Virus record (IMG/VR): IMGVR_UViG_3300046092_000062
Span: 186,001 to 250,000 of that record
Length of the DNA: 64,000 nucleotides
Direction: 5' to 3' (one strand)
Position numbers and translations under genes: made by a program. The notes below the pieces were generated by a model. The model did no database searches and was not told where the DNA came from. It saw nothing but the letters and a program-made list of their open reading frames with translations. Shown here in pieces: positions 7,684 to 26,910 of the stretch. Position 1 is the first letter of the stretch. Each line of letters opens with the position of its first letter.

Positions 7684-7874
7684 TTGAAATTAAAATCAGC
7701 AAGAAACTTCGTAATGTATACGGGGAAAGTGGTACTCAGGTTGCTTGGAAATGGTGCTTAGATAACTTTGGCCCACCGGAACCAAACGGTAAGCGTTGGG
7801 CATGGGACACTATGCGCACATTTTGGTTTCATAAAGAAGAAGATGCTACACTGTTTGCACTGAGGTGGTTATGA
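7680..7874 (+). CDS. LRW-family mini-protein I-15
   Basis: WCLDNFGP core; tail FHKEEDATLFALRWL. Confidence 0.85.
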   Translation: MIEIKISKKLRNVYGESGTQVAWKWCLDNFGPPEPNGKRWAWDTMRTFWFHKEEDATLFALRWL

Positions 7875-8098
7875 CAACAATTTCAATGAGCCATAATGTT
7901 CTAACAAATGCAGGGTGGATCCGCATACCGCTTGACGCTGAAAAAGTTATGCAAGCTCGACGACATGAAAGTTATTTTGAATTTTTTGAAACTGCACACA
8001 TTCGCAACCGGTATGCAATCTTTAGTGTGCCCAATGGATACGATTTCTTTTTTCGAAATAAAAAAGATGCTACAGAGTTTGTGTTGAGGTGGGCATGA
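7871..8098 (+). CDS. LRW-family mini-protein I-16
   Basis: tail FRNKKDATEFVLRWA. Confidence 0.85.
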   Translation: MTTISMSHNVLTNAGWIRIPLDAEKVMQARRHESYFEFFETAHIRNRYAIFSVPNGYDFFFRNKKDATEFVLRWA

Positions 8099-8385
8099 CT
8101 AAAGAAGAATGGACGAAATGGAATCGCAAGATACAACTAAACAGCATCTACGGTTTAAATCTCTGTAAAGAAATAGTGGCACCAAGGGATCAAGCACTAA
8201 CAGCGATACAAAACGCATGGGCTCAATGGCACTGTGATATCAAACACAACGTAACAGACTTTGGGTTTAAAGACTGGTGCAAGCGTGAGCATGGGTTTGA
8301 ATACCAACAGAATAGTGACCGGAGTGTTGTCACTACTGTACTTGACGAGCAAAAGTATGCTTGGTTCTTACTAAAGTGGGCATGA
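8095..8385 (+). CDS. LRW-family mini-protein I-17 with N-terminal PolB motif-B-like fragment
   Basis: N-term NRKIQLNSIYG; tail VLDEQKYAWFLLKWA. Confidence 0.85.
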   Translation: MTKEEWTKWNRKIQLNSIYGLNLCKEIVAPRDQALTAIQNAWAQWHCDIKHNVTDFGFKDWCKREHGFEYQQNSDRSVVTTVLDEQKYAWFLLKWA

Positions 8386-8388
8386 AAG

Positions 8389-8598
8389 ATGCAAGTAGAG
8401 AAAATGTTCCATCACACTGTGCCTAGCTCTAATGTGTGCATACAAGCCAGTAAATGGTTGCTGGAAGAGCGTGGATACAAGTTCGTCATTGAAGCCGAAA
8501 CAGAAGGACGCGGCAACAGTTCTAGATACACTGGCAGATACACATTCAAGTTCTTGTGTGAGCAAGAGTATATGTGGTTTCTAATGAGGTGGGCATGA
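8389..8598 (+). CDS. LRW-family mini-protein I-18 (close paralogue of 23627)
   Basis: tail RYTGRYTFKFLCEQEYMWFLMRWA. Confidence 0.85.
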   Translation: MQVEKMFHHTVPSSNVCIQASKWLLEERGYKFVIEAETEGRGNSSRYTGRYTFKFLCEQEYMWFLMRWA

Positions 8599-8599
8599 C

Positions 8600-8779
8600 A
8601 TGTTAACATACCGTATGATTGACTGGGTCAACATTCAACAACGCATGATTGAAGGCGGACTCAGTGATATTCCCAATGGGCGATTTCATGACAGCTACCG
8701 TAAGGACGATTACTTGTACTTTATGGTTGAGTTCGACACACCCGAGGATGAAATGATGTTTTTATTGAGGTGGGCATGA
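8600..8779 (+). CDS. LRW-family mini-protein I-19 (59 aa, missing from ORF track)
   Basis: hand translation MLTYRMIDWVNIQQ...FDTPEDEMMFLLRWA. Confidence 0.8.
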   Translation: MLTYRMIDWVNIQQRMIEGGLSDIPNGRFHDSYRKDDYLYFMVEFDTPEDEMMFLLRWA

Positions 8780-9000
8780 ACTCAAAACAAAGACGACGTG
8801 ATCGCAGAGCATGGAAACACGACATTGTGTTTACACACGAACAAGTTTATGAACGTGGTTACAACGACATGTGGGACTGGTGTGTTACTGTTTTTAATAA
8901 CAGGGGCAACAAGTGGAGAGAGCCGTATGGTCCTCCGGGCGTTAGATGGCAGTTTACCAAGCCAGAATACGCTGTGATGTTTGCACTACGCTGGCAATAA
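8776..9000 (+). CDS. LRW-family mini-protein I-20
   Basis: DWCVTVF core; tail FTKPEYAVMFALRWQ. Confidence 0.85.
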   Translation: MNSKQRRRDRRAWKHDIVFTHEQVYERGYNDMWDWCVTVFNNRGNKWREPYGPPGVRWQFTKPEYAVMFALRWQ

Positions 9001-16567: not shown

Positions 16568-16948
16568 TTGGCATACATTTTAAATAATCACAAGCATACC
16601 GGCAACTTATTTGTTGGCACAGCAACTACAGCAGCTAATCCATATTCGGTTAGTGGGGCAAATGGATATACCAATACTACATGGACCACTGCCGCCAACC
16701 CAATGACTGTTACACAACAAGCAACTATCCAGCTAAATGGCGAAAAGGCAGACATTGTTATAAACGGCAAGAGTCTCAAGGATACGTTGGAGGCATTGGA
16801 ATCGAGGTTGGCCATGTTGAAACCTGATGTCTCACTCGAAACCGAATGGGCAGAACTAAAACGGTTAGGCGATGAATACCGTAAATTGGAACTAGAGATT
16901 AAGGAAAAGATGAAAACTTGGGACACCCTTAAGAACACCTCACTTTGA
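16568..16948 (+). CDS. hypothetical protein, C-terminal coiled coil
   Basis: TTG start after GAGG. Confidence 0.7.
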   Translation: MAYILNNHKHTGNLFVGTATTAANPYSVSGANGYTNTTWTTAANPMTVTQQATIQLNGEKADIVINGKSLKDTLEALESRLAMLKPDVSLETEWAELKRLGDEYRKLELEIKEKMKTWDTLKNTSL

Positions 16949-16973
16949 CACATAAAGGCATTTAGTGTATAAT
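16945..16973 (+). promoter_or_regulatory. consensus sigma70 promoter heading array II
   Basis: TTGACA-17-TATAAT. Confidence 0.85.
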
Positions 16974-16979
16974 AGTACT

Positions 16980-17162
16980 ATGAACTCTATCACAATCAAT
17001 GGTGCCGATAAGGCACTCGAAGCAGGCGGCTGGTGCAGAAAACAATTTGGTATTAAGGGATGGACAATAGACTTGAACAGTATGTTGGGCAACAATCCCA
17101 CGTATAGGTTTGATTTCTCTAGTCCCGCTGATGCTACACTATTTGCATTAAAATGGCGGTAA
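16980..17162 (+). CDS. LRW-family mini-protein II-1
   Basis: WCRKQFG; tail FSSPADATLFALKWR. Confidence 0.85.
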   Translation: MNSITINGADKALEAGGWCRKQFGIKGWTIDLNSMLGNNPTYRFDFSSPADATLFALKWR

Positions 17163-17410
17163 CTTTAGTCGTTCATGAATTTACACTAGGTGACGTAGAT
17201 GATCCCGAAATCTACGCAGCCGTGCCCTTGTATGAATGGCAATTGAGTGATGCCGGTAAATGGGTTATGGAAAATGCTATTGAAACTCCCCAGTGGGGCA
17301 GAATCAATGATCATCTCACGTACTCACTTCGTTACAGAGTAACTGCAAAGCTCAAAGATGAGGATGCAACCTTTTTCAAGTTAAAGTATGATCACACTAA
17401 CCGACGCTGA
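17153..17410 (+). CDS. LRW-family mini-protein II-2
   Basis: tail LKDEDATFFKLKY. Confidence 0.8.
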   Translation: MAVTLVVHEFTLGDVDDPEIYAAVPLYEWQLSDAGKWVMENAIETPQWGRINDHLTYSLRYRVTAKLKDEDATFFKLKYDHTNRR

Positions 17411-17615
17411 GTGGCGTAATATTAGAAATCAAATCAGAATTGAATACGCCGACAAGCCCAGTGTTTGGCTATTGCGCTCTGTAATGAAGCGTGAGTTAGG
17501 ATTTACTGACCGCCATCATCAAGTATACAGAGAACAAACAGGTTACATCACTACTGTCTACTTGGACTTCTTTAATGATGCAGCAGAAACAATGTTTAGA
17601 TTGAAGTACTTATAA
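17388..17615 (+). CDS. LRW-family mini-protein II-3
   Basis: tail FFNDAAETMFRLKYL. Confidence 0.8.
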   Translation: MITLTDAEWRNIRNQIRIEYADKPSVWLLRSVMKRELGFTDRHHQVYREQTGYITTVYLDFFNDAAETMFRLKYL

Positions 17616-17831
17616 TTGGAATTCATTGCACGTATACTGCCCAAGTTAATTGCTGGTGTCCTAAGCATTATGGATGCCAGTCGCTTGCGGGATAAAGTAT
17701 ACCAGCAACAACACGAGCATGAGTTGATGTGGACTGCACTAGATGATATCGCACGTATGCACCCAGATCATCCGTCAGGAAAAATGGCAAAGAAAACACT
17801 AGATGAAGTTACTACACGCTACGGTAGGTAG
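17616..17831 (+). CDS. hypothetical protein (non-LRW)
   Basis: 71-aa ORF abutting previous stop. Confidence 0.65.
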   Translation: MEFIARILPKLIAGVLSIMDASRLRDKVYQQQHEHELMWTALDDIARMHPDHPSGKMAKKTLDEVTTRYGR

Positions 17832-18219
17832 GTTTCAGGCATGGCGCCATGCACGTTACCTCAAAAAGAAGGGCTGGACCCAGCGCCAGTTTGACCTCAT
17901 CAACGATCCTGATTTTTGCGCACGTGGCAGCAGTATTCGTAAAGATGTCTATCGCGGCTATCCCTACTTAATCTCGTTTGACGACACAGTACCAATGGAA
18001 CGGCGATATGGTCAAGGATGGATCACCGTAGTTGATAATATGACAGCGTGGTGCGAAGCGAATGTTACAGGCAAATGGAGAGAAGATATCCTTGCAGTCG
18101 ACAAGAGTTGGGACGACGAATGGACGCAAGGGTGCATGGGCCTAAGCCACAACATTCTATTCTTTGCATTTAACAATGAGCAAGATGCAGTAATGTTTAG
18201 TCTATACTGGAGTGTGTAA
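17803..18219 (+). CDS. LRW-family protein II-4 with long N-terminal extension
   Basis: AWCEAN core; tail FNNEQDAVMFSLYWSV; start uncertain. Confidence 0.8.
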   Translation: MKLLHATVGRFQAWRHARYLKKKGWTQRQFDLINDPDFCARGSSIRKDVYRGYPYLISFDDTVPMERRYGQGWITVVDNMTAWCEANVTGKWREDILAVDKSWDDEWTQGCMGLSHNILFFAFNNEQDAVMFSLYWSV

Positions 18220-18437
18220 TGAACATCGAATTCAAACATCGCCCGGACCGATACTACGAGTGGGAAATGTACTACAGTCCACAGGGCCCCGAAATGGGCG
18301 AAGTATACGGTTGGTGCTGGGAAACATTCGGTCACCCAGGACTAGCATTAGGTAATGGAACTTGGGATAACCACGGCGGATGGATTAAGTTTCGCAGAGA
18401 AGAAGATATGACTATGTTTATGTTGAGGTGGAGCTAA
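18219..18437 (+). CDS. LRW-family mini-protein II-5
   Basis: WCWETFG; tail FRREEDMTMFMLRWS. Confidence 0.85.
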   Translation: MNIEFKHRPDRYYEWEMYYSPQGPEMGEVYGWCWETFGHPGLALGNGTWDNHGGWIKFRREEDMTMFMLRWS

Positions 18438-18703
18438 TGGAATTATTTTATGGTGGCGGCGGACGCAGTAACCCGGACTTTATACACAAGGTGCGGGTTA
18501 GCAAAAAACGTGCAGGTGATGTTAGTCCACTGATGAAGTGGTGCGACGATTACCCAACTGGTGATAAGGGCTACTTTAAACGCTACTACATCGATTGGCG
18601 TGGTGACACAAAGAGCTGGGATAGTGACTATGTTACATTCCAATTTGAATGGGAACAAGCTGCTATCATGTTTGCTCTAAGTTTTGCGGACAGCGTATGC
18701 TAA
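18437..18703 (+). CDS. LRW-family mini-protein II-6
   Basis: KWCDD; tail FEWEQAAIMFALSF. Confidence 0.8.
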   Translation: MELFYGGGGRSNPDFIHKVRVSKKRAGDVSPLMKWCDDYPTGDKGYFKRYYIDWRGDTKSWDSDYVTFQFEWEQAAIMFALSFADSVC

Positions 18704-18981
18704 CAACAGTAAGAATTTGGGTACTAGATCACAATGTTATCCCCGACCAATCCGATGTAGACTACTGCAAGAACAACGGCATACAACTAGACGCCCAGCA
18801 AGGTGAGCATCAGCGTATCGAAACTGGCAGCGGGCAGGTCTATCACTACCGCACCTCACCCGGGGTCATAAAGCTAACCACATTTGACGAGAAAAGCGAA
18901 TGTATGTTACAATTACGCTACGCAGGTAGAATCCATCTAATGCAACAAATTTACACCGAGTCTGTAACACATTCGTATTAA
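18697..18981 (+). CDS. divergent LRW-like protein II-7
   Basis: FDEKSECMLQLRY; similar to 2936. Confidence 0.65.
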   Translation: MLTTVRIWVLDHNVIPDQSDVDYCKNNGIQLDAQQGEHQRIETGSGQVYHYRTSPGVIKLTTFDEKSECMLQLRYAGRIHLMQQIYTESVTHSY

Positions 18982-19310
18982 TGAAAGTTCGTCTTAAAAA
19001 TGGCCGCATTGGAGAGCATCGCCTTAAGTGGGACAACAACCCAATGGGCATTGCGCCATTGCTAATAGGATCGGAGACTGTGGAATTGGATATCACTGAA
19101 CGAATTTACAACGGGCCCGACTGCTACCCGTGGCGCAAGACGTTTGCACTTTGGCCAGTTAAAACAATAGGTGGTAGCCGCATTTGGTTACGCACTGTTT
19201 ACAAACAACGATTCTGGGCAGTGTGGGGCAAAGGCTTTCACATGGAGCCCTGGGTTGAATATGCAACACTATTTGAGATTTTAAAACATGAACCTAAATC
19301 ATCTATCTGA
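18981..19310 (+). CDS. Trp-rich hypothetical protein (non-LRW)
   Basis: WRKTFALWPVKT.GG..IWL..VY. Confidence 0.75.
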   Translation: MKVRLKNGRIGEHRLKWDNNPMGIAPLLIGSETVELDITERIYNGPDCYPWRKTFALWPVKTIGGSRIWLRTVYKQRFWAVWGKGFHMEPWVEYATLFEILKHEPKSSI

Positions 19311-19764
19311 CGTAGAGCTGCTACGCTACTTGGATTTGACTAGCACTGATCCATTGGTTATTCGTTTGATCAACATGCTGTCTGCACCTAACGGTGGGCT
19401 TGTTGGTGATTTAGTGGAAGCAGGCATGGATCCTAACACATGGGTCTTTACAGACGATCACCAAGACTACTACCCCGGAGATTACATCACCCACTTGCAA
19501 AAGATGGTTGCCTACGCAGAAGATGACCGTGCGGTAGCCGAAATGGATTTAGCGGATGCTCGTGAAGAACTTGATAAGTTAAGTCGACGCACCGTTACAG
19601 AACTTCTAGTAGATGCGCAGCGGGCAATTGACTCTGCAAAATCCAATCACCTTTACGCAGTTAGAGAAGCTGAAAAAGCTCACGAAGTAATTGACAAGGT
19701 ACAAGCAGAGAATAGACATCTCAAAGAGCAATTGGGCATGTGGAATATTTTAGGGACAGAGTAA
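19288..19764 (+). CDS. coiled-coil hypothetical protein
   Basis: heptad-like C-terminal half. Confidence 0.75.
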   Translation: MNLNHLSDVELLRYLDLTSTDPLVIRLINMLSAPNGGLVGDLVEAGMDPNTWVFTDDHQDYYPGDYITHLQKMVAYAEDDRAVAEMDLADAREELDKLSRRTVTELLVDAQRAIDSAKSNHLYAVREAEKAHEVIDKVQAENRHLKEQLGMWNILGTE

Positions 19765-19765
19765 C

Positions 19766-20032
19766 ATGGACAACGTTATTCACAGCAACAAATATTTCCG
19801 ATTAACTAAATGGCGCCATCGCAAAAGCGACAAGGTGCATTATCGCGTTGAGATGACATACAGTTGGTTGAATCTGGACCAAGAAGCAGGGGAGAAAAGT
19901 TTTCCTGAGCAAGTTCGCGATGTAATCGACCCAACTCGTTGTCGTGCTGGGCAAGCTGGCAACCACTGGAAATACCGTAACTTAGAAGAAGCTACAAAAG
20001 CCTATACATTTTTAGTAATGAAATTCTCATGA
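19766..20032 (+). CDS. LRW-family mini-protein II-8 (divergent)
   Basis: tail YRNLEEATKAYTFLVMKFS. Confidence 0.7.
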   Translation: MDNVIHSNKYFRLTKWRHRKSDKVHYRVEMTYSWLNLDQEAGEKSFPEQVRDVIDPTRCRAGQAGNHWKYRNLEEATKAYTFLVMKFS

Positions 20033-20310
20033 GTTATAAACTTAAACTAGCACACAAGCATCACGATCAATTAGATCAAATTGAAGCATGGCTCAACGCT
20101 AACGTTGGCCCTGGTAGCAAACGACATGCAAACAACACCTGGCTCGGTGCCGAAGATTGGTACTGCTATGAAGAAGCACTAGTTCCGGGCAGCGAGGAAG
20201 AGGAAGAAGAGTATTACGACAACGATGACAATCTTGAAGATATTTCAGATTTGATCTTTGTATTCCGCCGCGAAAGCGATCTGTTAATGTTTAGTTTGAA
20301 ATGGGCATAG
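20029..20310 (+). CDS. LRW-family mini-protein II-9 with acidic insertion
   Basis: SEEEEEEYYDNDDNLED; tail FRRESDLLMFSLKWA; TAG stop. Confidence 0.85.
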   Translation: MSYKLKLAHKHHDQLDQIEAWLNANVGPGSKRHANNTWLGAEDWYCYEEALVPGSEEEEEEYYDNDDNLEDISDLIFVFRRESDLLMFSLKWA

Positions 20311-20311
20311 C

Positions 20312-20668
20312 ATGTCTAGTCCTTTTAAACTCACAGATCTCCCCAACAACACTTGGTCAGTAACATGGACCGAGAATAACTTTGCACATAATGCTAAACA
20401 GCGAGACAAGTTAGTAGATATTCTGTTTAGCGAAATTGGATGCCGCGACGTTGGCCTAGGCATTAAACTAAACAATGGCGAACTAGAAACACTGTGGATT
20501 GGTGAAAAAGAGTATTTTCAACGGTCCGACATAGCCCACGGATGGGAAGACATGTATGTTGTTCGTGGTGTTGTGTTCATTCACGAACACGAAGCTAGGG
20601 AGTTTCATCAATTGATGGAAAGTCGATTGGCTTGGTACTACTTAAAGCAAGGTGCAGCAGTTGCTTGA
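20312..20668 (+). CDS. divergent LRW-like protein II-10
   Basis: FIHEHEAREF followed by a helical extension. Confidence 0.65.
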   Translation: MSSPFKLTDLPNNTWSVTWTENNFAHNAKQRDKLVDILFSEIGCRDVGLGIKLNNGELETLWIGEKEYFQRSDIAHGWEDMYVVRGVVFIHEHEAREFHQLMESRLAWYYLKQGAAVA

Positions 20669-20879
20669 AATTCCATACCCAACCCTAATGAATGGCAGTC
20701 GCACGTTCTCTATGGAAACTCTACAAAAGTGGCTTGACGCACACTTTCCTCAAGAACGTTCCTGCATTGTCCGTGTTGCTATTGTTAACAAAGGGCCTGG
20801 GAGGTACGGCGACGAACGATGGGCGATTCGTTTTTATCGGGATGAAGATGCAACACTGTTTGGATTGTTATGGCAGTAA
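20652..20879 (+). CDS. LRW-family mini-protein II-11
   Basis: tail FYRDEDATLFGLLWQ; start GTG 20652 or ATG 20688. Confidence 0.8.
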   Translation: MQQLLEIPYPTLMNGSRTFSMETLQKWLDAHFPQERSCIVRVAIVNKGPGRYGDERWAIRFYRDEDATLFGLLWQ

Positions 20880-21127
20880 CCTATAAAACTAATCCGGGAT
20901 TCCCAGGTGTTAATTTTCCCGTGTTGCACCGTGTTGTCTATGCACACACCATCGATGGTGTCCCAGCACAATGGCAAATCAGCTACAAGGATTATATAGT
21001 CAATGAATGGCTTAAAGCAAACACACGCCATCCTTACTACCACAGTCCCGGGTATCTTCGTGAAAAGTTCATTGAGTTTGAATGTGATGAAGAAGCAGTG
21101 CTATTCGCACTAAAGTGGGCAAAGTAA
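20870..21127 (+). CDS. LRW-family mini-protein II-12
   Basis: tail FECDEEAVLFALKWAK. Confidence 0.85.
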   Translation: MAVTYKTNPGFPGVNFPVLHRVVYAHTIDGVPAQWQISYKDYIVNEWLKANTRHPYYHSPGYLREKFIEFECDEEAVLFALKWAK

Positions 21128-21357
21128 TGTACAGCAAGACTCACCGATTTTTTAAATTCAAACACGTTCCCAAGGACTTTATATGGGGCAGTGAGGAAAT
21201 TGACCTGTGCCGCCTGCACATTGGTGACAACCGTATCACGATGCCGCTTGTGGACCGCGAATGGTTTAGTTCGCCCGATGGTGTATGGATTCGACATGAT
21301 TGTCTGGATAACGAAATCATAACTTGGTTTGCACTGAAAGCAAGCAATGAAGTTTGA
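21127..21357 (+). CDS. LRW-family mini-protein II-13
   Basis: tail LDNEIITWFALKA. Confidence 0.75.
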   Translation: MYSKTHRFFKFKHVPKDFIWGSEEIDLCRLHIGDNRITMPLVDREWFSSPDGVWIRHDCLDNEIITWFALKASNEV

Positions 21358-21607
21358 ACTGCTAGAAGGGCGCATACACGGAGCCCGTTACTACACAGTT
21401 AGACCAGACTTTAATTGGTGGCTTTCGGGCAGCTTAAACAATACAAATGCCACCTGGCGTGATATGTTAGAATGGTGTGTAGAAGTATTCGGTCCTAGCG
21501 CAGAAATGGGTGTGTGGGAACCCGGTGCTCGTTGGTATGCTAACAATGCAAAGTTTTGGTTTCGTAATGCAGAAGATAGGACAGCGTTTTTGCTGAGATG
21601 GTCATGA
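21347..21607 (+). CDS. LRW-family mini-protein II-14
   Basis: EWCVEVFGP; tail FRNAEDRTAFLLRWS. Confidence 0.85.
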   Translation: MKFELLEGRIHGARYYTVRPDFNWWLSGSLNNTNATWRDMLEWCVEVFGPSAEMGVWEPGARWYANNAKFWFRNAEDRTAFLLRWS

Positions 21608-21837
21608 AACCAGACCTAGTCCAATTTTACTGCGAACGAGATCCCTATTACGCTAAATCACGTGAGTACTACATGATGAACGTAAATCATTACGAAACTC
21701 CTTATTACCTTTGGATGATACAGGAATATCGCACTGTGCTGTTAAACAAACAGGGTAGCTGGAGCGACAGGGCTGAACAGCATTGGGGCTTTATTAATGA
21801 ATCGGATAGAACAATTTTTATGTTGAGATGGTCATGA
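21604..21837 (+). CDS. LRW-family mini-protein II-15
   Basis: tail FINESDRTIFMLRWS. Confidence 0.85.
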   Translation: MKPDLVQFYCERDPYYAKSREYYMMNVNHYETPYYLWMIQEYRTVLLNKQGSWSDRAEQHWGFINESDRTIFMLRWS

Positions 21838-22064
21838 CAACTACTGTTGAATTTGGTAAAGATCGTTATCACTTACAGGGTGAAATGGAAGAATGGTGCG
21901 AGCACAATATTGGGTCTAATCCTCGTTATAGCAACCACGTTTGGTCCAAGCCAGTTGAGTGGGAAGGGTTAGGCACATGGTGCATGGCTAGTGCGTTTGG
22001 CACAACATTTTTCTACTTTAAACATCGCAAAGATGCAACCTTCTTTGCATTGAAATGGAAATAA
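21834..22064 (+). CDS. LRW-family mini-protein II-16
   Basis: EWCEHNIG; tail FKHRKDATFFALKWK. Confidence 0.85.
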   Translation: MTTTVEFGKDRYHLQGEMEEWCEHNIGSNPRYSNHVWSKPVEWEGLGTWCMASAFGTTFFYFKHRKDATFFALKWK

Positions 22065-22065
22065 T

Positions 22066-22428
22066 ATGGATGATCGGAATCTTTGGCACCTGCTATGTGA
22101 TTGGGTAAAATTTGGTAAGTTTATAGAATGGAAAGAATGGTTTTACTGGACCATTGTGCCTGGCACTAGCATTGGGGTCATTTGGCCAAATGGCCCAATT
22201 TCTCTGGGTTGTGATCCTGATGGCGAAGAGGTAATCGTCGACTCCGCTGATCCAAACGATCACTATCGCCCATGGTTAGAAGAGCATGTCGGGCGTCAGG
22301 GCATTGATTGGGAATGGAGAATGGGAACTTTTGGATTTTGGACAGATGAAATAGATACTCTAGACATTAAGTTTCGAGTGGGAAAGACAAAGTATGCTAC
22401 AATAGCAGCATTGATGTGGGGCCAATGA
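22066..22428 (+). CDS. LRW-family protein II-17, extended N-terminus
   Basis: WLEEHVG core; tail KYATIAALMWGQ. Confidence 0.75.
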   Translation: MDDRNLWHLLCDWVKFGKFIEWKEWFYWTIVPGTSIGVIWPNGPISLGCDPDGEEVIVDSADPNDHYRPWLEEHVGRQGIDWEWRMGTFGFWTDEIDTLDIKFRVGKTKYATIAALMWGQ

Positions 22429-22628
22429 GAACCAAAACTACAAGAGAACTATATCCGTACCATGTGCGCTTTAAGCGTACAGGAGATTGGTATGGCAATG
22501 ATGGTACTTGGTATCAAATTAGCACATGGCTTCGAGAACACTTTGGGCAGAATTGGGAATATCTTGACAGTATGTTTATGTTCTCTAAGGAAGAACACAA
22601 AATGCTTTTTATAATGAGATGGCTATGA
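22425..22628 (+). CDS. LRW-family mini-protein II-18
   Basis: WLREHFG; tail FSKEEHKMLFIMRWL. Confidence 0.85.
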   Translation: MRTKTTRELYPYHVRFKRTGDWYGNDGTWYQISTWLREHFGQNWEYLDSMFMFSKEEHKMLFIMRWL

Positions 22629-23044
22629 CAAAACGCAACACCGTAGTAATGGATATCGAAACCACAACAGCAGTAATGCCGCGTGGGTCTTCTTCTGTTT
22701 TTCAGGGCATCACAGGTGGAATACATCCTGGAGAAATGATGATTTATGCCGGGGGCAGACAAACTGGCAAGTCCACACTGTCTTACCATATATTAAAGAG
22801 CAGATACTACGAAATGGGCATCAAGGAACAAATCCAGACGTTGGATACGTTTACACTAGATGGTGCTACATGGTACACTGTACACTGTCGTCCTTCGACT
22901 ATTAGTGGGTGGGTGCAAGAGCAAGACTCCGATATGTGGTGCCGACACTACAACACAGGCGCACTGCGAGTTGAATACCCCACGTTTAACAACTACAACA
23001 TACACGAAGAACTGTATTCAATGTTATTGTTGAAATGGTCATGA
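22625..23044 (+). CDS. LRW-family protein II-19 with DnaB-like Walker A fragment
   Basis: GGIHPGEMMIYAGGRQTGKST; tail IHEELYSMLLLKWS. Confidence 0.8.
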   Translation: MTKRNTVVMDIETTTAVMPRGSSSVFQGITGGIHPGEMMIYAGGRQTGKSTLSYHILKSRYYEMGIKEQIQTLDTFTLDGATWYTVHCRPSTISGWVQEQDSDMWCRHYNTGALRVEYPTFNNYNIHEELYSMLLLKWS

Positions 23045-23406
23045 AAATCTTAAAACAAACTGTAGCAGCTAAGACTTGCACCCTCAAAGCCAATTGGACT
23101 ATTGATCGCTCAGCAGACAATAGCTTTACGATCGGTGATGATACGTGGCAAGAGGTTGGGGCAGCACTACGAAAAGAGATTGATGAAGAAATTGTTAACA
23201 ATATTAGAAGGCATGAGCTTATGTTAAAAGGATGGGTCAAGGCCCCGTTTACTAGCGACAAGTTTGCTACACCAGGCAACCACCAGATAGCAGAAGTTAC
23301 TGCATGGATTCACATGAACACCACGGCGCAATATCAAATCTTCGGCCGAGAGTTCTGGTTCTCAAGCAAGGAAGACTTAACACTGTTTGTACTGAGGTGG
23401 GCATGA
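23041..23406 (+). CDS. LRW-family protein II-20 with major-capsid (gp23-like) fragment
   Basis: ILKQTVAAKT..LKANWT...AAL.KEIDEEIV; tail FSSKEDLTLFVLRWA. Confidence 0.8.
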   Translation: MKILKQTVAAKTCTLKANWTIDRSADNSFTIGDDTWQEVGAALRKEIDEEIVNNIRRHELMLKGWVKAPFTSDKFATPGNHQIAEVTAWIHMNTTAQYQIFGREFWFSSKEDLTLFVLRWA

Positions 23407-23630
23407 GCTATACACTGTACCCCGACGAAGACATTCTAAAGAAGCAACGATATATCGTTAAGTACAGAGGGAGCCTGTATGGGCACCGCGACGAGATGCT
23501 TGCCTGGTGTGTAGAACAGTTTGGTCCACATTCACATGCCTACAAAAATCCACGATGGAGTGAAAACTGGGACCGATTCTGCTTTAAGAATGAAAGCGAC
23601 ATGATGCTGTTTATGTTGAGATGGTCATGA
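23403..23630 (+). CDS. LRW-family mini-protein II-21
   Basis: WCVEQFGP; tail FKNESDMMLFMLRWS. Confidence 0.85.
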   Translation: MSYTLYPDEDILKKQRYIVKYRGSLYGHRDEMLAWCVEQFGPHSHAYKNPRWSENWDRFCFKNESDMMLFMLRWS

Positions 23631-23893
23631 CAGATACAGATAAATTAGAGTGGTCAGATATTTGCCGCCATGAGCATAAGTGCAAGGGTGATGAATTGTT
23701 ATATCACACTGTGCCTAGCTATAGTGTATATGTCAGGGCATCTAAATGGTTGCGGGAAGAGCGTGGGTACAAGTTTATCAGCGTAGAGGGTGAAACGGAA
23801 GAACATAGTGCTGGTTGGCGTTACACGGGTAGGTATACTTTTAAGTTCTTGTGCGAGCAAGAGTATATGTGGTTTAAGTTGAGGTGGTCGTGA
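23627..23893 (+). CDS. LRW-family mini-protein II-22 (close paralogue of 8389)
   Basis: tail RYTGRYTFKFLCEQEYMWFKLRWS. Confidence 0.85.
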   Translation: MTDTDKLEWSDICRHEHKCKGDELLYHTVPSYSVYVRASKWLREERGYKFISVEGETEEHSAGWRYTGRYTFKFLCEQEYMWFKLRWS

Positions 23894-24180
23894 TGAGTAG
23901 ACCAGGTTTTAATTCACAAGAGTGGTTTCGGGCCAAGCATGACCCAAAACATGATATGGTACATGGCGATAGACTGTATTACGTTGAGCCAGGTTGCGAA
24001 TACGGGTTCAAAGAAGATGACGGATATGTGTGGAATCGCATAAGCTGTAGCTATTGGTTCGGGGACTGGATTGAAGAAAATGGCGGTGAGGGACGTTGGC
24101 GAGCATACGGCGGCAGGCATCGTGCTATCTACATTGTGCGCGAAGACCTACTAGCGTTTATTAAGTTAAAGTGGCTATGA
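23893..24180 (+). CDS. LRW-family mini-protein II-23
   Basis: DWIEENG; tail VREDLLAFIKLKWL. Confidence 0.8.
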   Translation: MSRPGFNSQEWFRAKHDPKHDMVHGDRLYYVEPGCEYGFKEDDGYVWNRISCSYWFGDWIEENGGEGRWRAYGGRHRAIYIVREDLLAFIKLKWL

Positions 24181-24377
24181 AATACTGGAACAAAGACAAA
24201 CGTGTTCGGCAAAACCATTGGTATACAATTACTTCGCCTACATGGTGGTCGTATGCTGATACTAAACTAGAGTTGCAGAGATTTGACAGTCCGGGTAAGT
24301 TTTATCTATATTACGGCAGTAGAACAATTTGGTTTGAGCGTGAACAAGACGCAGTATTTTTTAGATTGAAGATGTGA
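24177..24377 (+). CDS. LRW-family mini-protein II-24
   Basis: tail FEREQDAVFFRLKM. Confidence 0.8.
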   Translation: MKYWNKDKRVRQNHWYTITSPTWWSYADTKLELQRFDSPGKFYLYYGSRTIWFEREQDAVFFRLKM

Positions 24378-24378
24378 T

Positions 24379-24570
24379 ATGAAGCAATATGGCCTAGCGA
24401 TTGAACGTTGGGGGCATCCACGTAAGGCAACTATATGGCATTGGCTTAAACAAAACTTTGGCCCCGAGGGTGATCGTTGGGGCACACAGTATGACTACGG
24501 ACTGGACAATCTCTGGATGAATGAAGATGTTTACATCATGTATAAATTAAAATGGGAACAACATGACTGA
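24379..24570 (+). CDS. LRW-family mini-protein II-25
   Basis: WLKQNFGP; tail MNEDVYIMYKLKW. Confidence 0.8.
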   Translation: MKQYGLAIERWGHPRKATIWHWLKQNFGPEGDRWGTQYDYGLDNLWMNEDVYIMYKLKWEQHD

Positions 24571-24961
24571 TAAGAATACCTCAGATCAAATGAAAATCTT
24601 GATCCCAATGATCCGTAAGGTCATGCCCACAATGATCGCAACTGACATCATTGGTGTGCAGACAATGGATATGGGAATCGAACTTGAAACCGGGGAGACT
24701 TACGTGGATGAAGCCGCTAGTCATGCAACCGAAAACAACATCGTGGAATGGTATTGGGCACGATTGCCCCTGTCTGCAGGAGCATTCTGGAACATCAAAG
24801 GAACCCAGGCGCATTACAAACAAGTTGATGCATGGTGTGAAGAAACATTCGGACCACGCTGCTCCAACGAGCATCCTGAATTTATATGGGATAAAATTAA
24901 CTACCGTTATTGCTTTAAACATTCCGAAGATAGGACAGCATTCGTGCTGAAGTGGGGCTAA
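24563..24961 (+). CDS. LRW-family protein II-26 with major-capsid Gol-region fragment
   Basis: ILIPMIRKVMPTMIATDIIGVQTM; WCEETFGP; tail FKHSEDRTAFVLKWG. Confidence 0.85.
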   Translation: MTDKNTSDQMKILIPMIRKVMPTMIATDIIGVQTMDMGIELETGETYVDEAASHATENNIVEWYWARLPLSAGAFWNIKGTQAHYKQVDAWCEETFGPRCSNEHPEFIWDKINYRYCFKHSEDRTAFVLKWG

Positions 24962-24998
24962 TATTTCACGCTACGTACTGCCAACACAGTCCGAGCAA

Positions 24999-25175
24999 AT
25001 GGACGCATGGTTCAATGGCGGGCACTTAATTGTGCTAACAGACATTATGTATTGGAGCGCTCACTACCAAGACTTAGCAGACTGGTGTAAAGGAAACGAT
25101 TCCCAAGTGCAAGGAATGACAGTGGTAGTACCCAATGAAAAAGTATTAACTTTATTCTGCCTACGCTGGTCGTAA
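24999..25175 (+). CDS. LRW-family mini-protein II-27 (58 aa, missing from track)
   Basis: hand translation MDAWFNGG...ADWCKG...VPNEKVLTLFCLRWS. Confidence 0.75.
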   Translation: MDAWFNGGHLIVLTDIMYWSAHYQDLADWCKGNDSQVQGMTVVVPNEKVLTLFCLRWS

Positions 25176-25185
25176 TAAGTACAGT

Positions 25186-26394
25186 ATGATCCACCCATTC
25201 TCCGACAAAAATAAGTTCGGATACTACACAATCGGTCAGTATACCACTTACTCAAAGCTAGAAGCATTTGAGATTTCTTCAAAGACTCAACAACCTATTA
25301 GTAGATATTTCAATGATGAAGTCTACACCGCTGCTAATCCGTTAAACGAGCCTCCGTTATCACTGTGGGAATACTACACCCAACGAGCTCAACAGATTCG
25401 CAACAGTTATGATTATGTAGTTGTTATGTACAGCGGCGGAGCAGATAGCAAAACTGTGCTTGACTCATTTGTTAAAAACAACATTCATGTAGATGAGATT
25501 GCTCAGTTTACACATGCAGAGGGTTCGGGCAAAAACGCATTCATGGATAGAGAAGTTTGGAAAGTGGCAGCGCCAACTACTCAAGCAATCGTTGACAACA
25601 ACCCACTCACTAAGCATAGACTCATTGATGTATCTAAGCATTACTACTCGCAGTTTGATGACGCAAACTTTAAATTTGACTTTATCTACCAAGTAAACAA
25701 TTTCCTGCACCCACTTGCTAGTATCCGATGCAGATTAAGAGAATATGTCGACGATTGGAAACATATCATCGATTCTGGAAAAAGATTATGTTTAGTGTGG
25801 GGAGGTGAAAAGCCATTGGTATTTTACAGCGGTATACACAAAAAGCACGTTTTTATGTTTTCTGACTGTATTGATAATATGGTACCACCGTCTGTTCAGC
25901 AAGAGAATAACCCCGGATGGTTTGATGAGTTGTTTTACTGGACTCCGGACATGCCCGAGATTGCAATTAAACAGGCGCACGTTGTAAAAAACTGTTTTAG
26001 GGATCCTACTAATTCTCTTGGTTACTTAGAAAGGACCAAGGCACCGTCAGCATCAGCATTTGAACAAATTGTAAATGAAGATGCCAATCGACGCAGTGGT
26101 TCGACTGTTATCAATGGCGTTAGGTGGTTTTTGAAACGCGAAGCGTTGCATCAATTGATATACCCTACATGGAATCCGTACACGTTTTCAGACGGAAAAC
26201 CCCCGTCTATTATTACACATCCACGTGACCAATGGTTCTGGAACGACACTAGTGCATTAAATACTGCACGGACTAACTATATGCAGGGCATTGTAAAGTT
26301 TAAACAAATGGTTCCAGTTTCTGCACTAAAAGACCCAACTAATTTTGAAACTGGTTTGAAATTTATTAATACTAAAATGTACCCTGTAGAATAA
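25186..26394 (+). CDS. PP-loop (adenine nucleotide alpha-hydrolase) family protein
   Basis: VVMYSGGADS PP-loop; 402 aa; TAAGTA at 25176. Confidence 0.7.
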   Translation: MIHPFSDKNKFGYYTIGQYTTYSKLEAFEISSKTQQPISRYFNDEVYTAANPLNEPPLSLWEYYTQRAQQIRNSYDYVVVMYSGGADSKTVLDSFVKNNIHVDEIAQFTHAEGSGKNAFMDREVWKVAAPTTQAIVDNNPLTKHRLIDVSKHYYSQFDDANFKFDFIYQVNNFLHPLASIRCRLREYVDDWKHIIDSGKRLCLVWGGEKPLVFYSGIHKKHVFMFSDCIDNMVPPSVQQENNPGWFDELFYWTPDMPEIAIKQAHVVKNCFRDPTNSLGYLERTKAPSASAFEQIVNEDANRRSGSTVINGVRWFLKREALHQLIYPTWNPYTFSDGKPPSIITHPRDQWFWNDTSALNTARTNYMQGIVKFKQMVPVSALKDPTNFETGLKFINTKMYPVE

Positions 26395-26397
26395 TAG

Positions 26398-26426
26398 TTG
26401 CGCTAAATGGCATCATATGCTATAAT
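26398..26426 (+). promoter_or_regulatory. sigma70-type promoter
   Basis: TTGCGC-17-TATAAT with extended TG. Confidence 0.7.
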
Positions 26427-26431
26427 ACAGT

Positions 26432-26647
26432 ATGGAAAAGAAAATCAAATGGCTACACGAAGGTACACTACTTCGTGCCACTGTGCCCGTTGCACCACGT
26501 GGATTTGAAAGATCCCTTCGCGAAGAAGACATGGATCCAATCCAAGAATGGTGTGACGAAGTTGGGTACGGACGCCGCATGAGCTTTGACACGTTTAAAT
26601 TTAAAACACAGGCAGAGATAACTGCATTTCTACTAAAATGGTCTTAA
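26432..26647 (+). CDS. LRW-family mini-protein II-28
   Basis: EWCDE; tail FKTQAEITAFLLKWS. Confidence 0.85.
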   Translation: MEKKIKWLHEGTLLRATVPVAPRGFERSLREEDMDPIQEWCDEVGYGRRMSFDTFKFKTQAEITAFLLKWS

Positions 26648-26910
26648 TCGACAATGACATCAGCAGCATGTACCCAGGCAGCGTTGAAAACCCAAGAAGC
26701 AGAGTATTTTGGGCACAAATTGATGAGGAACATCGCATGAGAGTACTAAACAAGAAGTATTGGCCGTATCATGTTAAAGCCGAGACAACCGATAAACAAG
26801 AGCGCTGGTGCTATGAGAATCTCAAAAGTAGCGAATGGCGTAATGTTGGCAGTTACTTTGCATTCAAGCGAGAGCAAGATGCAATGATGTTTACACTAAA
26901 GTGGTCCTAA
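26638..26910 (+). CDS. LRW-family mini-protein II-29
   Basis: N-term DISSMYP; RWCYENL; tail FKREQDAMMFTLKWS. Confidence 0.85.
   Translation: MVLIDNDISSMYPGSVENPRSRVFWAQIDEEHRMRVLNKKYWPYHVKAETTDKQERWCYENLKSSEWRNVGSYFAFKREQDAMMFTLKWS

What the first reader, a model, noticed from the sequence alone, without database searches (positions are those of the whole stretch)
16980..26910. Array II: about 27-29 more members behind a perfect sigma70 promoter, with longer chimeric members concentrated at 22066-24961
Seen: TTGACA-17-TATAAT at 16945 heads the array, and 20 members run uninterrupted from 19766 to 25175. LKW tails (AAA/AAG TGG) are more common here than in array I, so the tail is conserved at protein level and not only as a DNA signal. 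Most of the longest members, and three of the recognisable core-gene fragments, cluster in this block. Unrelated genes (17616, 18981, 19288, 25186) are interspersed, as expected for an insertion hotspot.
Basis: seen in the sequence. Interest (0 to 1): 0.85.

Follow-up and report, generated by a model that had tools for sequence, protein, structure and literature searches.

The report
Early gene array of tail-sharing small proteins
A 320-kb uncultured jumbo phage carries, behind an early promoter, about 25 diverged copies of an undescribed small-protein family whose shared last residues also encode the ribosome-binding site of the next gene, and three or four copies carry a short piece copied from the capsid or a DNA-replication protein.

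Summary
A conserved, perfect TTGACA-17-TATAAT promoter at 16945-16973 heads a run of plus-strand small genes.

- **Membership:** 20 genes are solid members of one protein family by an HMM built only from outside sequences. Five more are probable, two share only the tail, and six interspersed genes are unrelated.
- **The family:** a C-terminal domain of about 55 aa (WC..FG...W...FxF..ExDA..FxL[R/K]W-stop), predicted fold beta-alpha-beta-beta-alpha. It has no Pfam, PHROG, NCBIfam or PDB match but about 4,500 clusters in metagenomes, all viral and unnamed.
- **Real genes:** orthologues in related phages give dN/dS of about 0.1.
- **Dual-use tail:** it is the last helix of the fold. As TTG-AGG-TGG-NCA-TGA it also supplies the Shine-Dalgarno sequence and overlapping start of the next gene.
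- **Turnover:** members are gained, lost and swapped between relatives exactly at these junctions.
- **Chimeras:** three members carry N-terminal pieces of gp23 capsid protein (T2 residues 98-118 and 253-302) or of a RecA/DnaB-type P-loop. The first capsid piece forms its own conserved lineage in small ORFs.
- **Function:** untested. The likeliest role is a set of non-enzymatic early host-interaction modules. A decoy role for the chimeras is possible but unproven.

The parts
16945..16973 (+). Early sigma70-type promoter heading array II. The ATG of the first member lies 6 nt after the -10, so the transcript may be leaderless (inferred).
   Evidence: 12 of 12 match. Conserved in L002, L004, L005 and L007. 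It shares the phage's extended early-promoter consensus.
16980..17162 (+). Family member, solid, tail FALKWR
   Evidence: Outside-only HMM E 1.3e-10. dN/dS 0.06 against L002.
17153..17410 (+). Probable diverged member, tail FKLKY plus 6 aa
   Evidence: hhalign P 0.0065 over the whole domain. dN/dS 0.07.
17388..17615 (+). Tail-only resemblance (MFRLKYL); membership unproven
   Evidence: Window HMM E 0.0026, tail only. hhalign found nothing. dN/dS 0.02.
17616..17831 (+). Unrelated small gene (likely start at 17670), present in all relatives
   Evidence: No HMM or hhalign signal. dN/dS 0.04.
17803..18219 (+). Family member, solid, 138 aa with a long N-terminal part
   Evidence: Outside-only HMM E 1.1e-10. 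dN/dS 0.08.
18219..18437 (+). Family member, solid; this is the protein that was modelled
   Evidence: HMM E 1.8e-16. AlphaFold2 pLDDT 81.8, beta-alpha-beta-beta-alpha.
18437..18703 (+). Family member, solid (MELFYGGGG type). It is the most widely conserved subfamily seen. Its orthologue sits directly upstream of DnaJ-ClpA in another phage.
   Evidence: HMM E 3.4e-07. Many 85-88 aa orthologues. L131 context.
18697..19764 (+). Three unrelated genes (18697-18981, 18981-19310, 19288-19764), conserved in relatives
   Evidence: hhalign P above 0.6. dN/dS 0.12-0.15. No Pfam or PHROG hit.
19766..20032 (+). Tail-only resemblance (FLVMKFS); membership unproven
   Evidence: No HMM or hhalign signal. dN/dS 0.05.
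20029..20310 (+). Family member, solid, with an acidic insert
   Evidence: HMM E 3.7e-13. dN/dS 0.02.
20312..20668 (+). Non-member inside the 'uninterrupted' run
   Evidence: hhalign P 0.33. Truncated in L002.
20688..20879 (+). Family member, solid, tail FGLLWQ
   Evidence: HMM E 8.3e-06.
20870..21127 (+). Family member, solid
   Evidence: HMM E 1.1e-04. hhalign P 3e-05.
21127..21357 (+). Probable diverged member, tail FALKASNEV
   Evidence: hhalign P 0.032 over the whole domain. dN/dS 0.05.
21347..22064 (+). Three solid members (21347-21607, 21604-21837, 21834-22064) joined by TGGTCATGA overlaps
   Evidence: HMM E 7.7e-22, 3.6e-08 and 3.3e-12. Junctions shown.
22066..22428 (+). Probable diverged member, 120 aa, 11 Trp
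   Evidence: hhalign P 0.0013. dN/dS 0.17.
22425..22628 (+). Family member, solid
   Evidence: HMM E 1e-10.
22625..23044 (+). Chimera: an N-terminal RecA/DnaB-type Walker A stretch (about aa 28-60) joined to a diverged family domain
   Evidence: phrog_97 UvsX E 6e-4 and DnaB E 5e-3. hhalign P 0.031 for the domain. The same architecture occurs in outside representatives.
23041..23406 (+). Chimera: aa 2-51 match gp23 residues 253-302 (T2 numbering), joined to a solid family domain
   Evidence: Pfam Gp23 E 7e-5. BLAST to T2 gp23 and to the EC.P1 capsid protein. HMM E 2e-11.
23403..23893 (+). Variable slot holding two solid members here (23403-23630, 23627-23893). L007 has four members and L002 has one. 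23627 is 64% identical to array I member 8389.
   Evidence: The breakpoints lie exactly at TTGAGGTGGNCATGA.
23893..24180 (+). Probable diverged member, tail IKLKWL
   Evidence: hhalign P 0.021. dN/dS 0.07.
24177..24377 (+). Solid member present only in this genome: an exact ATGA-to-ATGA cassette insertion. It holds a promoter-like site at 24283.
   Evidence: HMM E 6.3e-05. Absent from L002-L004, L007 and L008.
24379..24570 (+). Family member, solid, tail KLKWEQHD
   Evidence: HMM E 6.4e-07.
24563..24961 (+). Chimera: aa 16-36 match gp23 residues 98-118 (the most conserved gp23 stretch, in the Gol region), joined to a solid family domain
   Evidence: Pfam Gp23 E 3e-6. T2 alignment. tblastn finds the piece in capsid genes of about 1,500 phage records. 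In the model aa 1-38 are unstructured with pLDDT below 50.
24999..25175 (+). Family member, solid. Its tail Arg is CGC and no gene overlaps its end.
   Evidence: HMM E 1.8e-05. Codons.
25186..26394 (+). Unrelated 402-aa gene with an SGGxDS (PP-loop-like) motif. It is an indel between relatives.
   Evidence: No Pfam or PHROG hit. Absent from L007 and L008. Flanked by TACAGTATG repeats at a promoter -10.
26398..26426 (+). Second promoter (TTGCGC-17-TATAAT here; TTGACC-17-TATAAT in L007), 5 nt before the ATG at 26432
   Evidence: Read from the sequence.
26432..26910 (+). Two solid members (26432-26647, 26638-26910). 26638 is related to outside proteins whose N-terminus carries the gp23 98-118-like piece; here that piece has decayed.
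   Evidence: HMM E 1.2e-07 and 7.5e-15. BLAST to P0139 and P0080.
4406..9000 (+). Array I: 20 members of the same family. It is bracketed by terminator-promoter cassettes whose promoters start at 3996 and 9030.
   Evidence: HMM results. Tail codons. Cassettes.

Best explanation
**What it is.** Array II is an early, polycistronic, translationally coupled operon in a plastic region of a 320-kb jumbo phage that has gp23-type capsid genes. It encodes about 25 old, diverged paralogues of one undescribed small-protein family.

**The protein.** Each member has a variable N-terminal part of 10-80 aa and a conserved C-terminal domain of about 55 aa. The conserved residues of the domain are aromatic and hydrophobic core positions. 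Its surface and net charge vary widely.

**The tail does three jobs.**
1. The last residues, F-x-L-R/K-W-x-stop, form the final helix of the fold.
2. In the codon form TTG-AGG-TGG-NCA-TGA they are the Shine-Dalgarno sequence and the overlapping ATG of the next cistron.
3. This shared junction is where members are inserted, deleted and exchanged between related phages.

**Shown here.**
- Homology of the members.
- Purifying selection on them.
- Codon bias at the junction.
- Breakpoints at the junction.
- Conservation of the promoter.

**Inferred function.** The proteins are probably non-enzymatic binding modules made early in infection. They would act on host or rival-phage proteins, with the variable part and surface setting the target. 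In three or four members the variable part is a diverged peptide copied from the capsid protein or from a RecA/DnaB-type ATPase.
For: **Family is real**
- Window HMM with clean controls, and an outside-only HMM.
- About 4,539 clusters at E <= 1e-3 in a 1.8-billion-protein library.
- In 138 of the 150 best representatives the domain ends within 3 aa of the C-terminus.

**It is not a described family**
- No match in Pfam, PHROG, NCBIfam or PDB sequences.
- The model has pLDDT 81.8. Foldseek finds nothing in the PDB at E below 2 and only unnamed phage proteins in BFVD.

**The ORFs are genes**
- dN/dS is 0.02-0.3 for nearly every ORF.
- Pooled values are 0.11 for the domain and 0.17 for the N-terminal parts.

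**Early operon**
- The promoter is perfect and conserved, and belongs to the phage's own early-promoter class. High-scoring sites (at least 11 of 12) split 14:1 in favour of the plus strand.

**Dual coding of the tail**
- Tail Arg is AGG or AGA in 23 of 25 members, against 36 of 204 Arg codons in large genes (p = 1e-13).
- The two CGC tails belong to the only two R-tail members with no overlapping downstream start.

**Turnover at junctions**.

**Diversified surfaces**
- pI ranges from 4.3 to 10, and Trp content is 5.3%.

**Lineage-specific expansion**
- Phosso members resemble one another and share an F-K-L signature.
Against: - No functional data exist for any member. No partner, expression or virion data were available.
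- 'Early' rests on promoter sequence alone.
- The fold prediction is of medium confidence, and a three-stranded beta-alpha-beta-beta-alpha unit is too small for Foldseek to exclude distant kinship (ACT, RRM or eIF1-like hits had TM 0.4-0.5).
- Translational coupling is inferred from overlaps and codon bias, not measured.
- K-tail junctions lack a good Shine-Dalgarno sequence, so the coupling mechanism is not uniform.
Confidence: 0.6

Rival explanations
1. The chimeric members are decoys or baits. Their exposed N-terminal peptides mimic the conserved capsid stretch (gp23 98-118, in the region of the Gol peptide that binds EF-Tu and triggers the Lit protease in T4) or a RecA-type P-loop. Made early, they would occupy or mis-trigger host sensors of these phage proteins, or would bind EF-Tu.
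For: **Lineage of the capsid piece**
- In small ORFs it has its own signature, I-P-M-I-R-K-x-M-P. That signature occurs in 0 capsid-sized ORFs among the 60 IMG/VR matches. It does occur in chimeras of at least two different family subtypes and in two small ORFs without the family domain.
- The pieces are 60-70% alike between chimeras whose domains are about 30% alike.
- They are at most 55-63% identical to 120 sampled capsid proteins.

**Exposure**
- The piece is modelled as unstructured.

**Published sensors**
- Lit and CapRel sense capsid proteins through short motifs. Avs7 binds capsid protein together with EF-Tu. Avs20 senses RecA-type ATPase domains (bioRxiv 10.64898/2026.01.04.697583).
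- The Gol region is described as the most conserved part of gp23 and as an EF-Tu binder (PMC3014915).
Against: - Within this clade the pieces evolve faster than the rest of the protein, with dN/dS 0.3-0.5 on 33-62 codons.
- The normally invariant GVQPM reads GVQTM, GVQHM or GTQPM in close relatives.
- An early Gol-like peptide could just as well trigger a Lit-type system.
- The phage's own capsid gene could not be fetched, so ongoing copying from it is not fully excluded.
- The exact T4 Gol coordinates were not verified here.
- I found no published precedent in the paper read for this. No dedicated literature search for decoys was run.
Confidence: 0.12
2. The core-gene pieces are neutral scars of illegitimate recombination. 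They stay in frame only because an open reading frame is needed to keep translational coupling through the operon.
For: - Constraint on the pieces is relaxed, with dN/dS 0.3-0.5 against 0.11 for the domain.
- The piece has decayed in 26638.
- The region demonstrably recombines at junctions.
Against: - The same piece persists in many 50%-identity clusters and with different partners, and keeps the residues that are conserved in capsid proteins.
- A neutral 25-aa peptide should be unrecognisable at that divergence.
Confidence: 0.2
3. The array is a hotspot of selfish or junk ORFs, and the shared tail is only a DNA-level signal (ribosome-binding site or recombination site).
For: - The tail carries a strong Shine-Dalgarno sequence with AGG bias.
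- Indels lie at junctions.
- All members are annotated as hypothetical.
Against: - Homology extends over about 55 aa, not just the tail.
- K-for-R tails are frequent, and Phosso tails use CGN codons.
- dN/dS is about 0.1 in both halves of the proteins.
- Paralogues are 25-45% identical, so they are old.
Confidence: 0.05
4. The domain is a small nucleic-acid- or ligand-binding unit (RRM, ACT or eIF1-like), or an adaptor or client of the phage's own DnaJ-ClpA chaperone pair.
For: - The beta-alpha-beta-beta-alpha order resembles a ferredoxin-like fold lacking its last strand. Weak Foldseek hits to eIF1, ACT-like and pterin-dehydratase-like proteins have TM 0.4-0.5.
- In L131 and L132 the orthologue of member 18437 lies directly upstream of DnaJ-ClpA.
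- In the window a family-like 70-aa ORF (57499-57711) lies directly upstream of DnaJ (57695-58540) and ClpA/B (58527-60818).
Against: - All structural hits have E above 2 and probability at most 0.11.
- Charge ranges from -13 to +8, which argues against a common nucleic-acid ligand.
- The chaperone adjacency concerns one member in one lineage and one marginal ORF here.
Confidence: 0.1

Closest known systems
PeSL-mediated modular shuffling in hyperplastic regions of T4-type phages (Arbiol et al. 2010, PMC2839356; Comeau et al. 2014, PMC4122927)
   Same: - Runs of small non-essential early genes lie between blocks of core genes.
- Close relatives differ by insertion, deletion or replacement of whole genes at a short repeated junction sequence.
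- True terminator-promoter cassettes of that type also occur in this window, at the promoters starting at 3996, 9030 and 40953, and they bracket array I.
- Gene 25186 is an indel at a promoter -10.
   Different: - Inside the arrays the repeated junction is not a promoter plus stem-loop.
- It is the coding tail of one protein family, fused to the ribosome-binding site and start of the next gene.
- The shuffled units are paralogues of one family rather than unrelated ORFans.
- Mini-circles were not and could not be tested.
Lineage-specific expansions of small domains in jumbo phages, such as the roughly 35-copy zinc ribbon of Bacillus phage G (Iyer et al. 2021, PMC7824862)
   Same: Dozens of copies of one small domain sit in one jumbo phage genome. 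The function is unknown and is proposed to be regulatory or binding.
   Different: The fold is different and has no metal site. The family is spread over thousands of metagenomic clusters. The genes form translationally coupled tandem arrays with a dual-coded tail. The family is not mentioned in the passages of that survey that I searched.
Gol region of T4 gp23, the EF-Tu-binding trigger of the Lit protease (review PMC3014915)
   Same: The N-terminal piece of member 24563 aligns to T2 gp23 residues 98-118. This lies in the first quarter of gp23 and is its most conserved stretch, as the review describes for Gol.
   Different: - It is a peptide of about 25 aa in a 132-aa early protein, not part of a capsid protein.
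- It is only 52% identical to T2.
- EF-Tu binding and Lit activation are untested.
Translationally coupled operons with ATGA overlaps, a general bacterial and phage arrangement (established knowledge)
   Same: There is a 4-nt stop-start overlap with a Shine-Dalgarno sequence inside the upstream coding sequence.
   Different: Here the Shine-Dalgarno sequence is built from three conserved residues (L-R-W) of a protein family and is repeated about 30 times. This forces a codon that is otherwise rare: AGG accounts for 2% of Arg codons in the large genes and 72% in the tails.

Membership tests
The small-protein family itself (undescribed; defined here by HMM) | C-terminal domain of about 55 aa, WC..FG...W...FxF..ExDA..FxL[R/K]W, ending at the C-terminus | tested here: met
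   There are 20 ORFs of array II with E below 1e-3 against an HMM built from outside sequences only. Controls give E of 0.8 or more. Five more are supported by hhalign at P 0.001-0.03.
Any curated protein family (Pfam-A, PHROGs v4, NCBIfam 20, PDB sequences) | Significant profile match to the conserved domain | tested here: not met
   The domain has no hit. Only the Gp23 model matches, and only the N-terminal pieces of two members.
Known structural fold (PDB) | Foldseek match with E <= 1e-3 or TM above 0.5 | tested here: not met
   The best hit has E 2.4, and the highest query-normalised TM among listed hits is 0.49. The BFVD matches are unnamed proteins of uncultured phages.
PeSL cassettes (Arbiol 2010) | Strong early promoter plus stem-loop terminator repeated at gene boundaries | tested here: not met
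   Junctions inside array II are coding tails with ATGA overlaps and have no promoter or hairpin. Cassettes of that type do flank array I, at the promoters starting at 3996 and 9030.
PeSL cassettes (Arbiol 2010) | Indels and replacements between close relatives with breakpoints in the repeated junction | tested here: met
   Three relatives hold 2, 4 and 1 members between the same two tails. Member 24177 is an exact ATGA-to-ATGA insertion.
PeSL cassettes (Arbiol 2010) | Excised mini-circles formed by recombination between junctions | not testable with these tools
   This needs PCR or read data.
Gp23 major capsid protein (PF07068) | Full HK97-type capsid protein of 375 aa or more | tested here: not met
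   Only 27 and 57 model positions are matched, in proteins of 132 and 121-123 aa.
Gol-type EF-Tu-binding peptide | Homology to the conserved gp23 stretch in the first quarter of the protein | tested here: met
   aa 16-36 align to T2 gp23 residues 98-118 at 52% identity. The same stretch hits capsid genes in about 1,500 phage records.
Gol-type EF-Tu-binding peptide | Binds EF-Tu and activates a Lit-type protease | not testable with these tools
   This needs a biochemical assay.
Translationally coupled operon | Stop-start overlap with a Shine-Dalgarno sequence 5-10 nt upstream, and selection on it | tested here: met
   All 23 AGG/AGA tails have an overlapping start. Both CGC tails have none. AGG is enriched at p = 1e-17. 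The coupling itself was not measured.

The most novel reading that the evidence does not exclude
The family is a bait-display system of jumbo phages. A common inert scaffold, made early in dozens of variants, presents variable N-terminal peptides. In several subfamilies the peptide is a long-conserved mimic of the capsid protein's EF-Tu-binding (Gol-type) stretch or of a RecA-type P-loop. These variants would act as decoys that blunt host sensors of core phage proteins (Lit, CapRel or Avs-type), or would pre-load EF-Tu.
Probability: 0.12. Interest if true: 0.9.

Novelty: new variant of a known kind. Interest (0 to 1): 0.65.

Why it matters
- **Scale.** The family is very large (about 4,500 clusters at 50% identity) and exclusively viral. 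It has no entry in Pfam, PHROGs or NCBIfam and no structural relative, yet at least 45 copies lie in 64 kb of one genome. Naming it would annotate a visible share of the unknown genes of freshwater and soil jumbo phages.
- **Dual coding.** Three conserved residues double as the ribosome-binding site of the next gene and as the recombination joint. This shows how a gene family can carry its own means of expression and shuffling.
- **Capsid-peptide fusions.** If the small ORFs with the capsid-derived peptide are functional, they would be a new kind of phage counter-measure or translation-factor binder. This can be tested with ordinary laboratory phage-host assays.

Tried and rejected
- **Close cultured relatives.** Megablast of the array against 50,697 phage records found nothing. 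tblastn with single members found only one weak Phosso hit each.
- **Naming the P-loop piece.** PHROG scans of six outside P-loop chimeras gave no hit, so I could not narrow it beyond a RecA/DnaB/UvsX type. My first guess of large terminase was dropped.
- **Fetching the phage's own capsid gene.** Two pattern scans failed. The second hit only the chimera in this genome.
- **Escherichia phage EC.P1 hit.** It turned out to be that phage's unannotated capsid gene, not a chimera.
- **Word-based search with the capsid piece.** It found only close orthologues.
- **Reassignment of TAG to a sense codon.** I tested this because of the tRNA(CUA). No long gene holds an in-frame TAG.
- **Membership of six ORFs.** 17616, 18697, 18981, 19288, 20312 and 26910 were rejected.
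- **Literature.** A search for a described multigene family of this kind found nothing relevant.
- **Model of the chimera.** It is of low confidence overall (pLDDT 61.5), so it was not used for a fold search.

Full report
**Observation**

TTGACA, 17 nt, TATAAT lies at 16945-16973, 6 nt before the ATG at 16980. Promoter-like sites in general are no more frequent here than in shuffled sequence (29 against 29.7). This one counts for two reasons:
- It is kept in four related contigs, with one change at -35 in L007.
- It fits the phage's own extended early-promoter consensus, which recurs at 3996, 9030, 28026, 40953, 41192 and 44362. High-scoring sites (at least 11 of 12) are almost all on the plus strand, 14:1.

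Behind the promoter lies a chain of plus-strand ORFs, mostly joined by overlapping stop and start codons.

**Are the ORFs one family?**

- An HMM built from 24 obvious members, iterated within the window, recovers about 20 ORFs in 4406-9000 (array I) and 20 in 16980-26910. The best shuffled or reversed control has E 0.2-0.4.
- To avoid circularity I rebuilt the HMM from 150 outside database proteins only. The same 20 ORFs of array II score E 1e-4 to 5e-23, and the best control scores 0.8.
- Profile-profile comparison, using orthologues from related contigs, adds 17153, 21127, 22066, 22625 and 23893. P is 0.001-0.03, and each alignment spans the whole domain and ends at the C-terminus.
- The same comparison gives nothing for 17616, 18697, 18981, 19288, 19766, 20312 and 26910, or for two control genes.
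- 17388 and 19766 resemble the family only in the tail.
- The count is therefore 20 solid, 5 probable and 2 tail-only members, plus six unrelated genes.
- The run 19766-25175 is 20 adjacent ORFs, of which 18 or 19 belong to the family.

**What the family is**

The conserved part is the last 55 aa or so: WC..FG, then W, then FxF, then ExDA..FxL[R/K]W and one small residue before the stop.

No curated library knows it:
- It has no hit in Pfam, PHROGs, NCBIfam or PDB sequences. The only hit is the Gp23 model on the extra N-terminal pieces of two members.

It is nonetheless abundant:
- A full HMMER scan of 1.84 billion representative proteins finds 4,539 clusters at E <= 1e-3. They are nearly all 55-160 aa long.
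- In 138 of the 150 best hits the domain ends within 3 residues of the C-terminus. Eight of the 150 carry two domains in tandem.
- The ESM Atlas neighbours are all viral and unnamed.

Structure:
- AlphaFold2 with the window paralogues as alignment gives a medium-to-good model (pLDDT 81.8). The order of elements is strand, helix, strand, strand, helix, and the tail forms the final helix.
- Foldseek finds no PDB relative. The best hit has E 2.4, and no listed hit reaches a query-normalised TM of 0.5 (highest 0.49). In BFVD it finds only unnamed proteins of uncultured phages.

Chemistry:
- The conserved positions are aromatic or hydrophobic.
- Net charge runs from -13 to +8 and Trp content is 5.3%.
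- I read this as a common core with diversified surfaces and no catalytic site. That is an inference.

**Whose genome**

- The window is identical to part of IMG/VR contig 3300046092_000062, which is 320,767 bp.
- Its ClpA-like protein is 41-44% identical to those of jumbo phages Phosso, PA5oct and relatives.
- The window also encodes NAMPT, DNA ligase, a clamp loader, an endolysin, DnaJ and ClpA/B.
- Among cultured phages only Sinorhizobium phage Phosso shows the family. It has at least 14 members, most of them among tRNA genes near the start of the record, all annotated as hypothetical.
- Phosso members resemble one another more than they resemble window members and share an F-K-L signature. 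The family therefore expanded or homogenised within lineages.

**Real genes, and old ones**

- Contigs L002-L005 (about 86% DNA identity) and L007 and L008 (about 91%) are collinear with array II.
- Against L002, nearly every ORF, including the weak and unrelated ones, has dN/dS of 0.02-0.3.
- Pooled over 19 members, dN/dS is 0.11 for the domain and 0.17-0.18 for the N-terminal parts.
- Paralogues within the window share only 25-45% identity. The one exception is the pair 8389 and 23627, at 64%, which links the two arrays.
- This is a long-standing set of distinct proteins, not a recent burst of copies.

**The tail is dual-coded**

- In array I the tail reads TTG-AGG-TGG-NCA-TGA in almost every member. 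GAGGTGG is a strong Shine-Dalgarno sequence, and the ATG of the next gene overlaps the TGA.
- AGG makes up 4 of 204 Arg codons in the window's large genes but 18 of 25 tail Arg codons (p = 1e-17). AGG or AGA accounts for 23 of 25.
- The two exceptions, both CGC, are 8770-9000 and 24999-25175. These are exactly the two R-tail members with no overlapping downstream start.
- The motif is nevertheless not only a DNA signal. Array II has K in place of R in 16 of 24 tails against 2 of 19 in array I (p = 4e-4). This keeps the charge but destroys the GAGG.
- Phosso keeps L-R-W/F with CGC and CGT where no gene overlaps.

**Turnover**

Synteny breaks fall on the junctions.
- Between the tail ending at 23406 and the tail ending at 23893, the window has two members, L007 has four different ones and L002 has one. 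The alignments break exactly after TTGAGGTGGNCATGA on both sides.
- Member 24177-24377 exists only in the window and is an exact ATGA-to-ATGA insertion.
- The unrelated 402-aa gene 25186-26394 is missing from L007 and L008. It is flanked by TACAGTATG repeats that belong to the -10 and start region of a second promoter before 26432.
- By contrast 17616, 18981 and 19288 are present in every relative that covers the site.
- 'Insertion hotspot' is therefore true of particular joints, not of the array as a whole.

**The chimeras**

Mapping:
- 24563-24961: aa 16-36 align to T2 gp23 residues 98-118 at 52% identity. tblastn places this stretch in the capsid genes of about 1,500 phage records.
- A review describes the T4 Gol segment as a 29-residue stretch in the first quarter of gp23, the most conserved part of the protein and an EF-Tu binder (PMC3014915). 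I did not verify its exact coordinates.
- 23041-23406: aa 2-51 align to gp23 residues 253-302.
- 22625-23044: carries a GG.xPGE...AGGRQTGKS stretch that matches UvsX and DnaB profiles weakly.
- 26638-26910 is related to outside proteins that carry the first capsid piece. In the window copy the piece has decayed.

Conservation:
- All three chimeras are kept in the relatives.
- Many outside clusters show the same two architectures.
- A DNA pattern for the small-ORF version of the capsid piece (I-P-M-I-R-K-x-M-P) hits no capsid-sized ORF in IMG/VR. It does hit chimeras of two family subtypes and two small ORFs without the family domain.
- A capsid-type pattern hits 120 capsid genes and no chimera.
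- The pieces are more alike among chimeras (60-70%) than they are to sampled capsid proteins (at most 63%). The attached domains are only about 30% alike.
- This points to one old capture that has been kept.

Against strong function:
- Within this clade the pieces have dN/dS of 0.3-0.5, on few codons.
- The GVQPM core varies among close relatives.
- In a low-confidence model the piece is unstructured.

**How it most likely works**

Shown: a conserved early promoter, a chain of overlapping cistrons whose joints carry a selected Shine-Dalgarno sequence, selected coding sequences, and joint-specific recombination.

Inferred: the products are early, non-enzymatic binding modules with paralogue-specific targets, as expected for expanded, surface-diversified families of small phage proteins.

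The boldest reading is that the peptide-bearing members are decoys for host sensors of core phage proteins. It fits recent reports that Lit and CapRel read short capsid motifs, that Avs7 binds capsid protein together with EF-Tu, and that Avs20 senses RecA-type ATPases. It has no direct support, and I give it about 0.12.

Other readings are listed with their tests under rival explanations: neutral scars, a DNA-only signal, a nucleic-acid binder, and a link to the phage's DnaJ-ClpA chaperone pair.

**Comparison and novelty**

The nearest described system is PeSL-mediated shuffling of small early genes in T4-type phages (PMC2839356). The genome biology is the same, and true terminator-promoter cassettes flank array I. 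Within the arrays, however, the joint is a coding tail of one family rather than a regulatory cassette.

I found no description of this family or of the capsid-peptide small ORFs. I rate it a new variant of a known kind, of moderate to high interest.

Noticed in passing
window 1515-1589 (+), promoter at 1478-1506: There is a tRNA with anticodon CUA, an amber-suppressor type that ARAGORN labels Pyl, just after an early promoter. None of 43 larger genes ends in TAG, but no long gene holds an in-frame TAG. Phosso also encodes a tRNA(cta).
   Followed up: partly
window about 3960-4030, 9000-9070 and 40920-40990 (+): Three near-identical terminator-promoter cassettes: a GTAATAC...GTATTAC hairpin, a T-run, then TTGACCCA-N-TATAAT. 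They are PeSL-like, and two of them bracket array I.
   Followed up: partly
window 25186-26394 (+): A 402-aa protein with an SGGADS (PP-loop-like) motif and no Pfam or PHROG hit. It is present in L002 and L004 at 69% identity and absent from L007 and L008.
   Followed up: partly
window 15946-16500 (+): A 184-aa protein with a signal peptide and a C-terminal Phe, like a Gram-negative outer-membrane beta-barrel. It is absent from L007 and L008, and L002 has a different 186-aa gene at the site. An OmpA-family gene also lies next to family member P0027 in L133.
   Followed up: no
window 57448-60818 (+): A promoter overlaps a hairpin at 57448-57495. It is followed by a 70-aa family-like ORF (57499-57711, tail YQLKYVNSL, hhalign P 0.023), then DnaJ (57695-58540) and a ClpA/B-type ATPase (58527-60818). 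In L131 and L132 the orthologue of member 18437 occupies the position upstream of DnaJ-ClpA.
   Followed up: partly
window 16973-16982 and 26426-26434: The ATGs of the first genes after two promoters lie only 5-6 nt after the -10 hexamer and have no Shine-Dalgarno sequence. This suggests leaderless transcripts.
   Followed up: no
window 8389-8598 and 23627-23893: These are the only close paralogue pair (64% protein identity), and they lie in different arrays. 23627 sits in the variable slot.
   Followed up: partly
L167 (contig IMGVR_UViG_3300012943_000029) and L191 (IMGVR_UViG_3300033143_001962): Small ORFs of 93 and 89 aa carry the same capsid-like IPMIRK...GVQPM peptide without the family domain. 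L154 has a 138-aa ORF with the peptide and a family-like tail (ALALRWM).
   Followed up: no
database proteins P0027, P0029, P0036, P0063, P0090, P0124, P0155, P0161: These proteins have two family domains in tandem. They look like fusions of neighbouring array members.
   Followed up: no
window 59-1462 (+): A nicotinamide phosphoribosyltransferase (NAMPT) gene, an auxiliary metabolic gene (phrog_448, E 1e-156).
   Followed up: no
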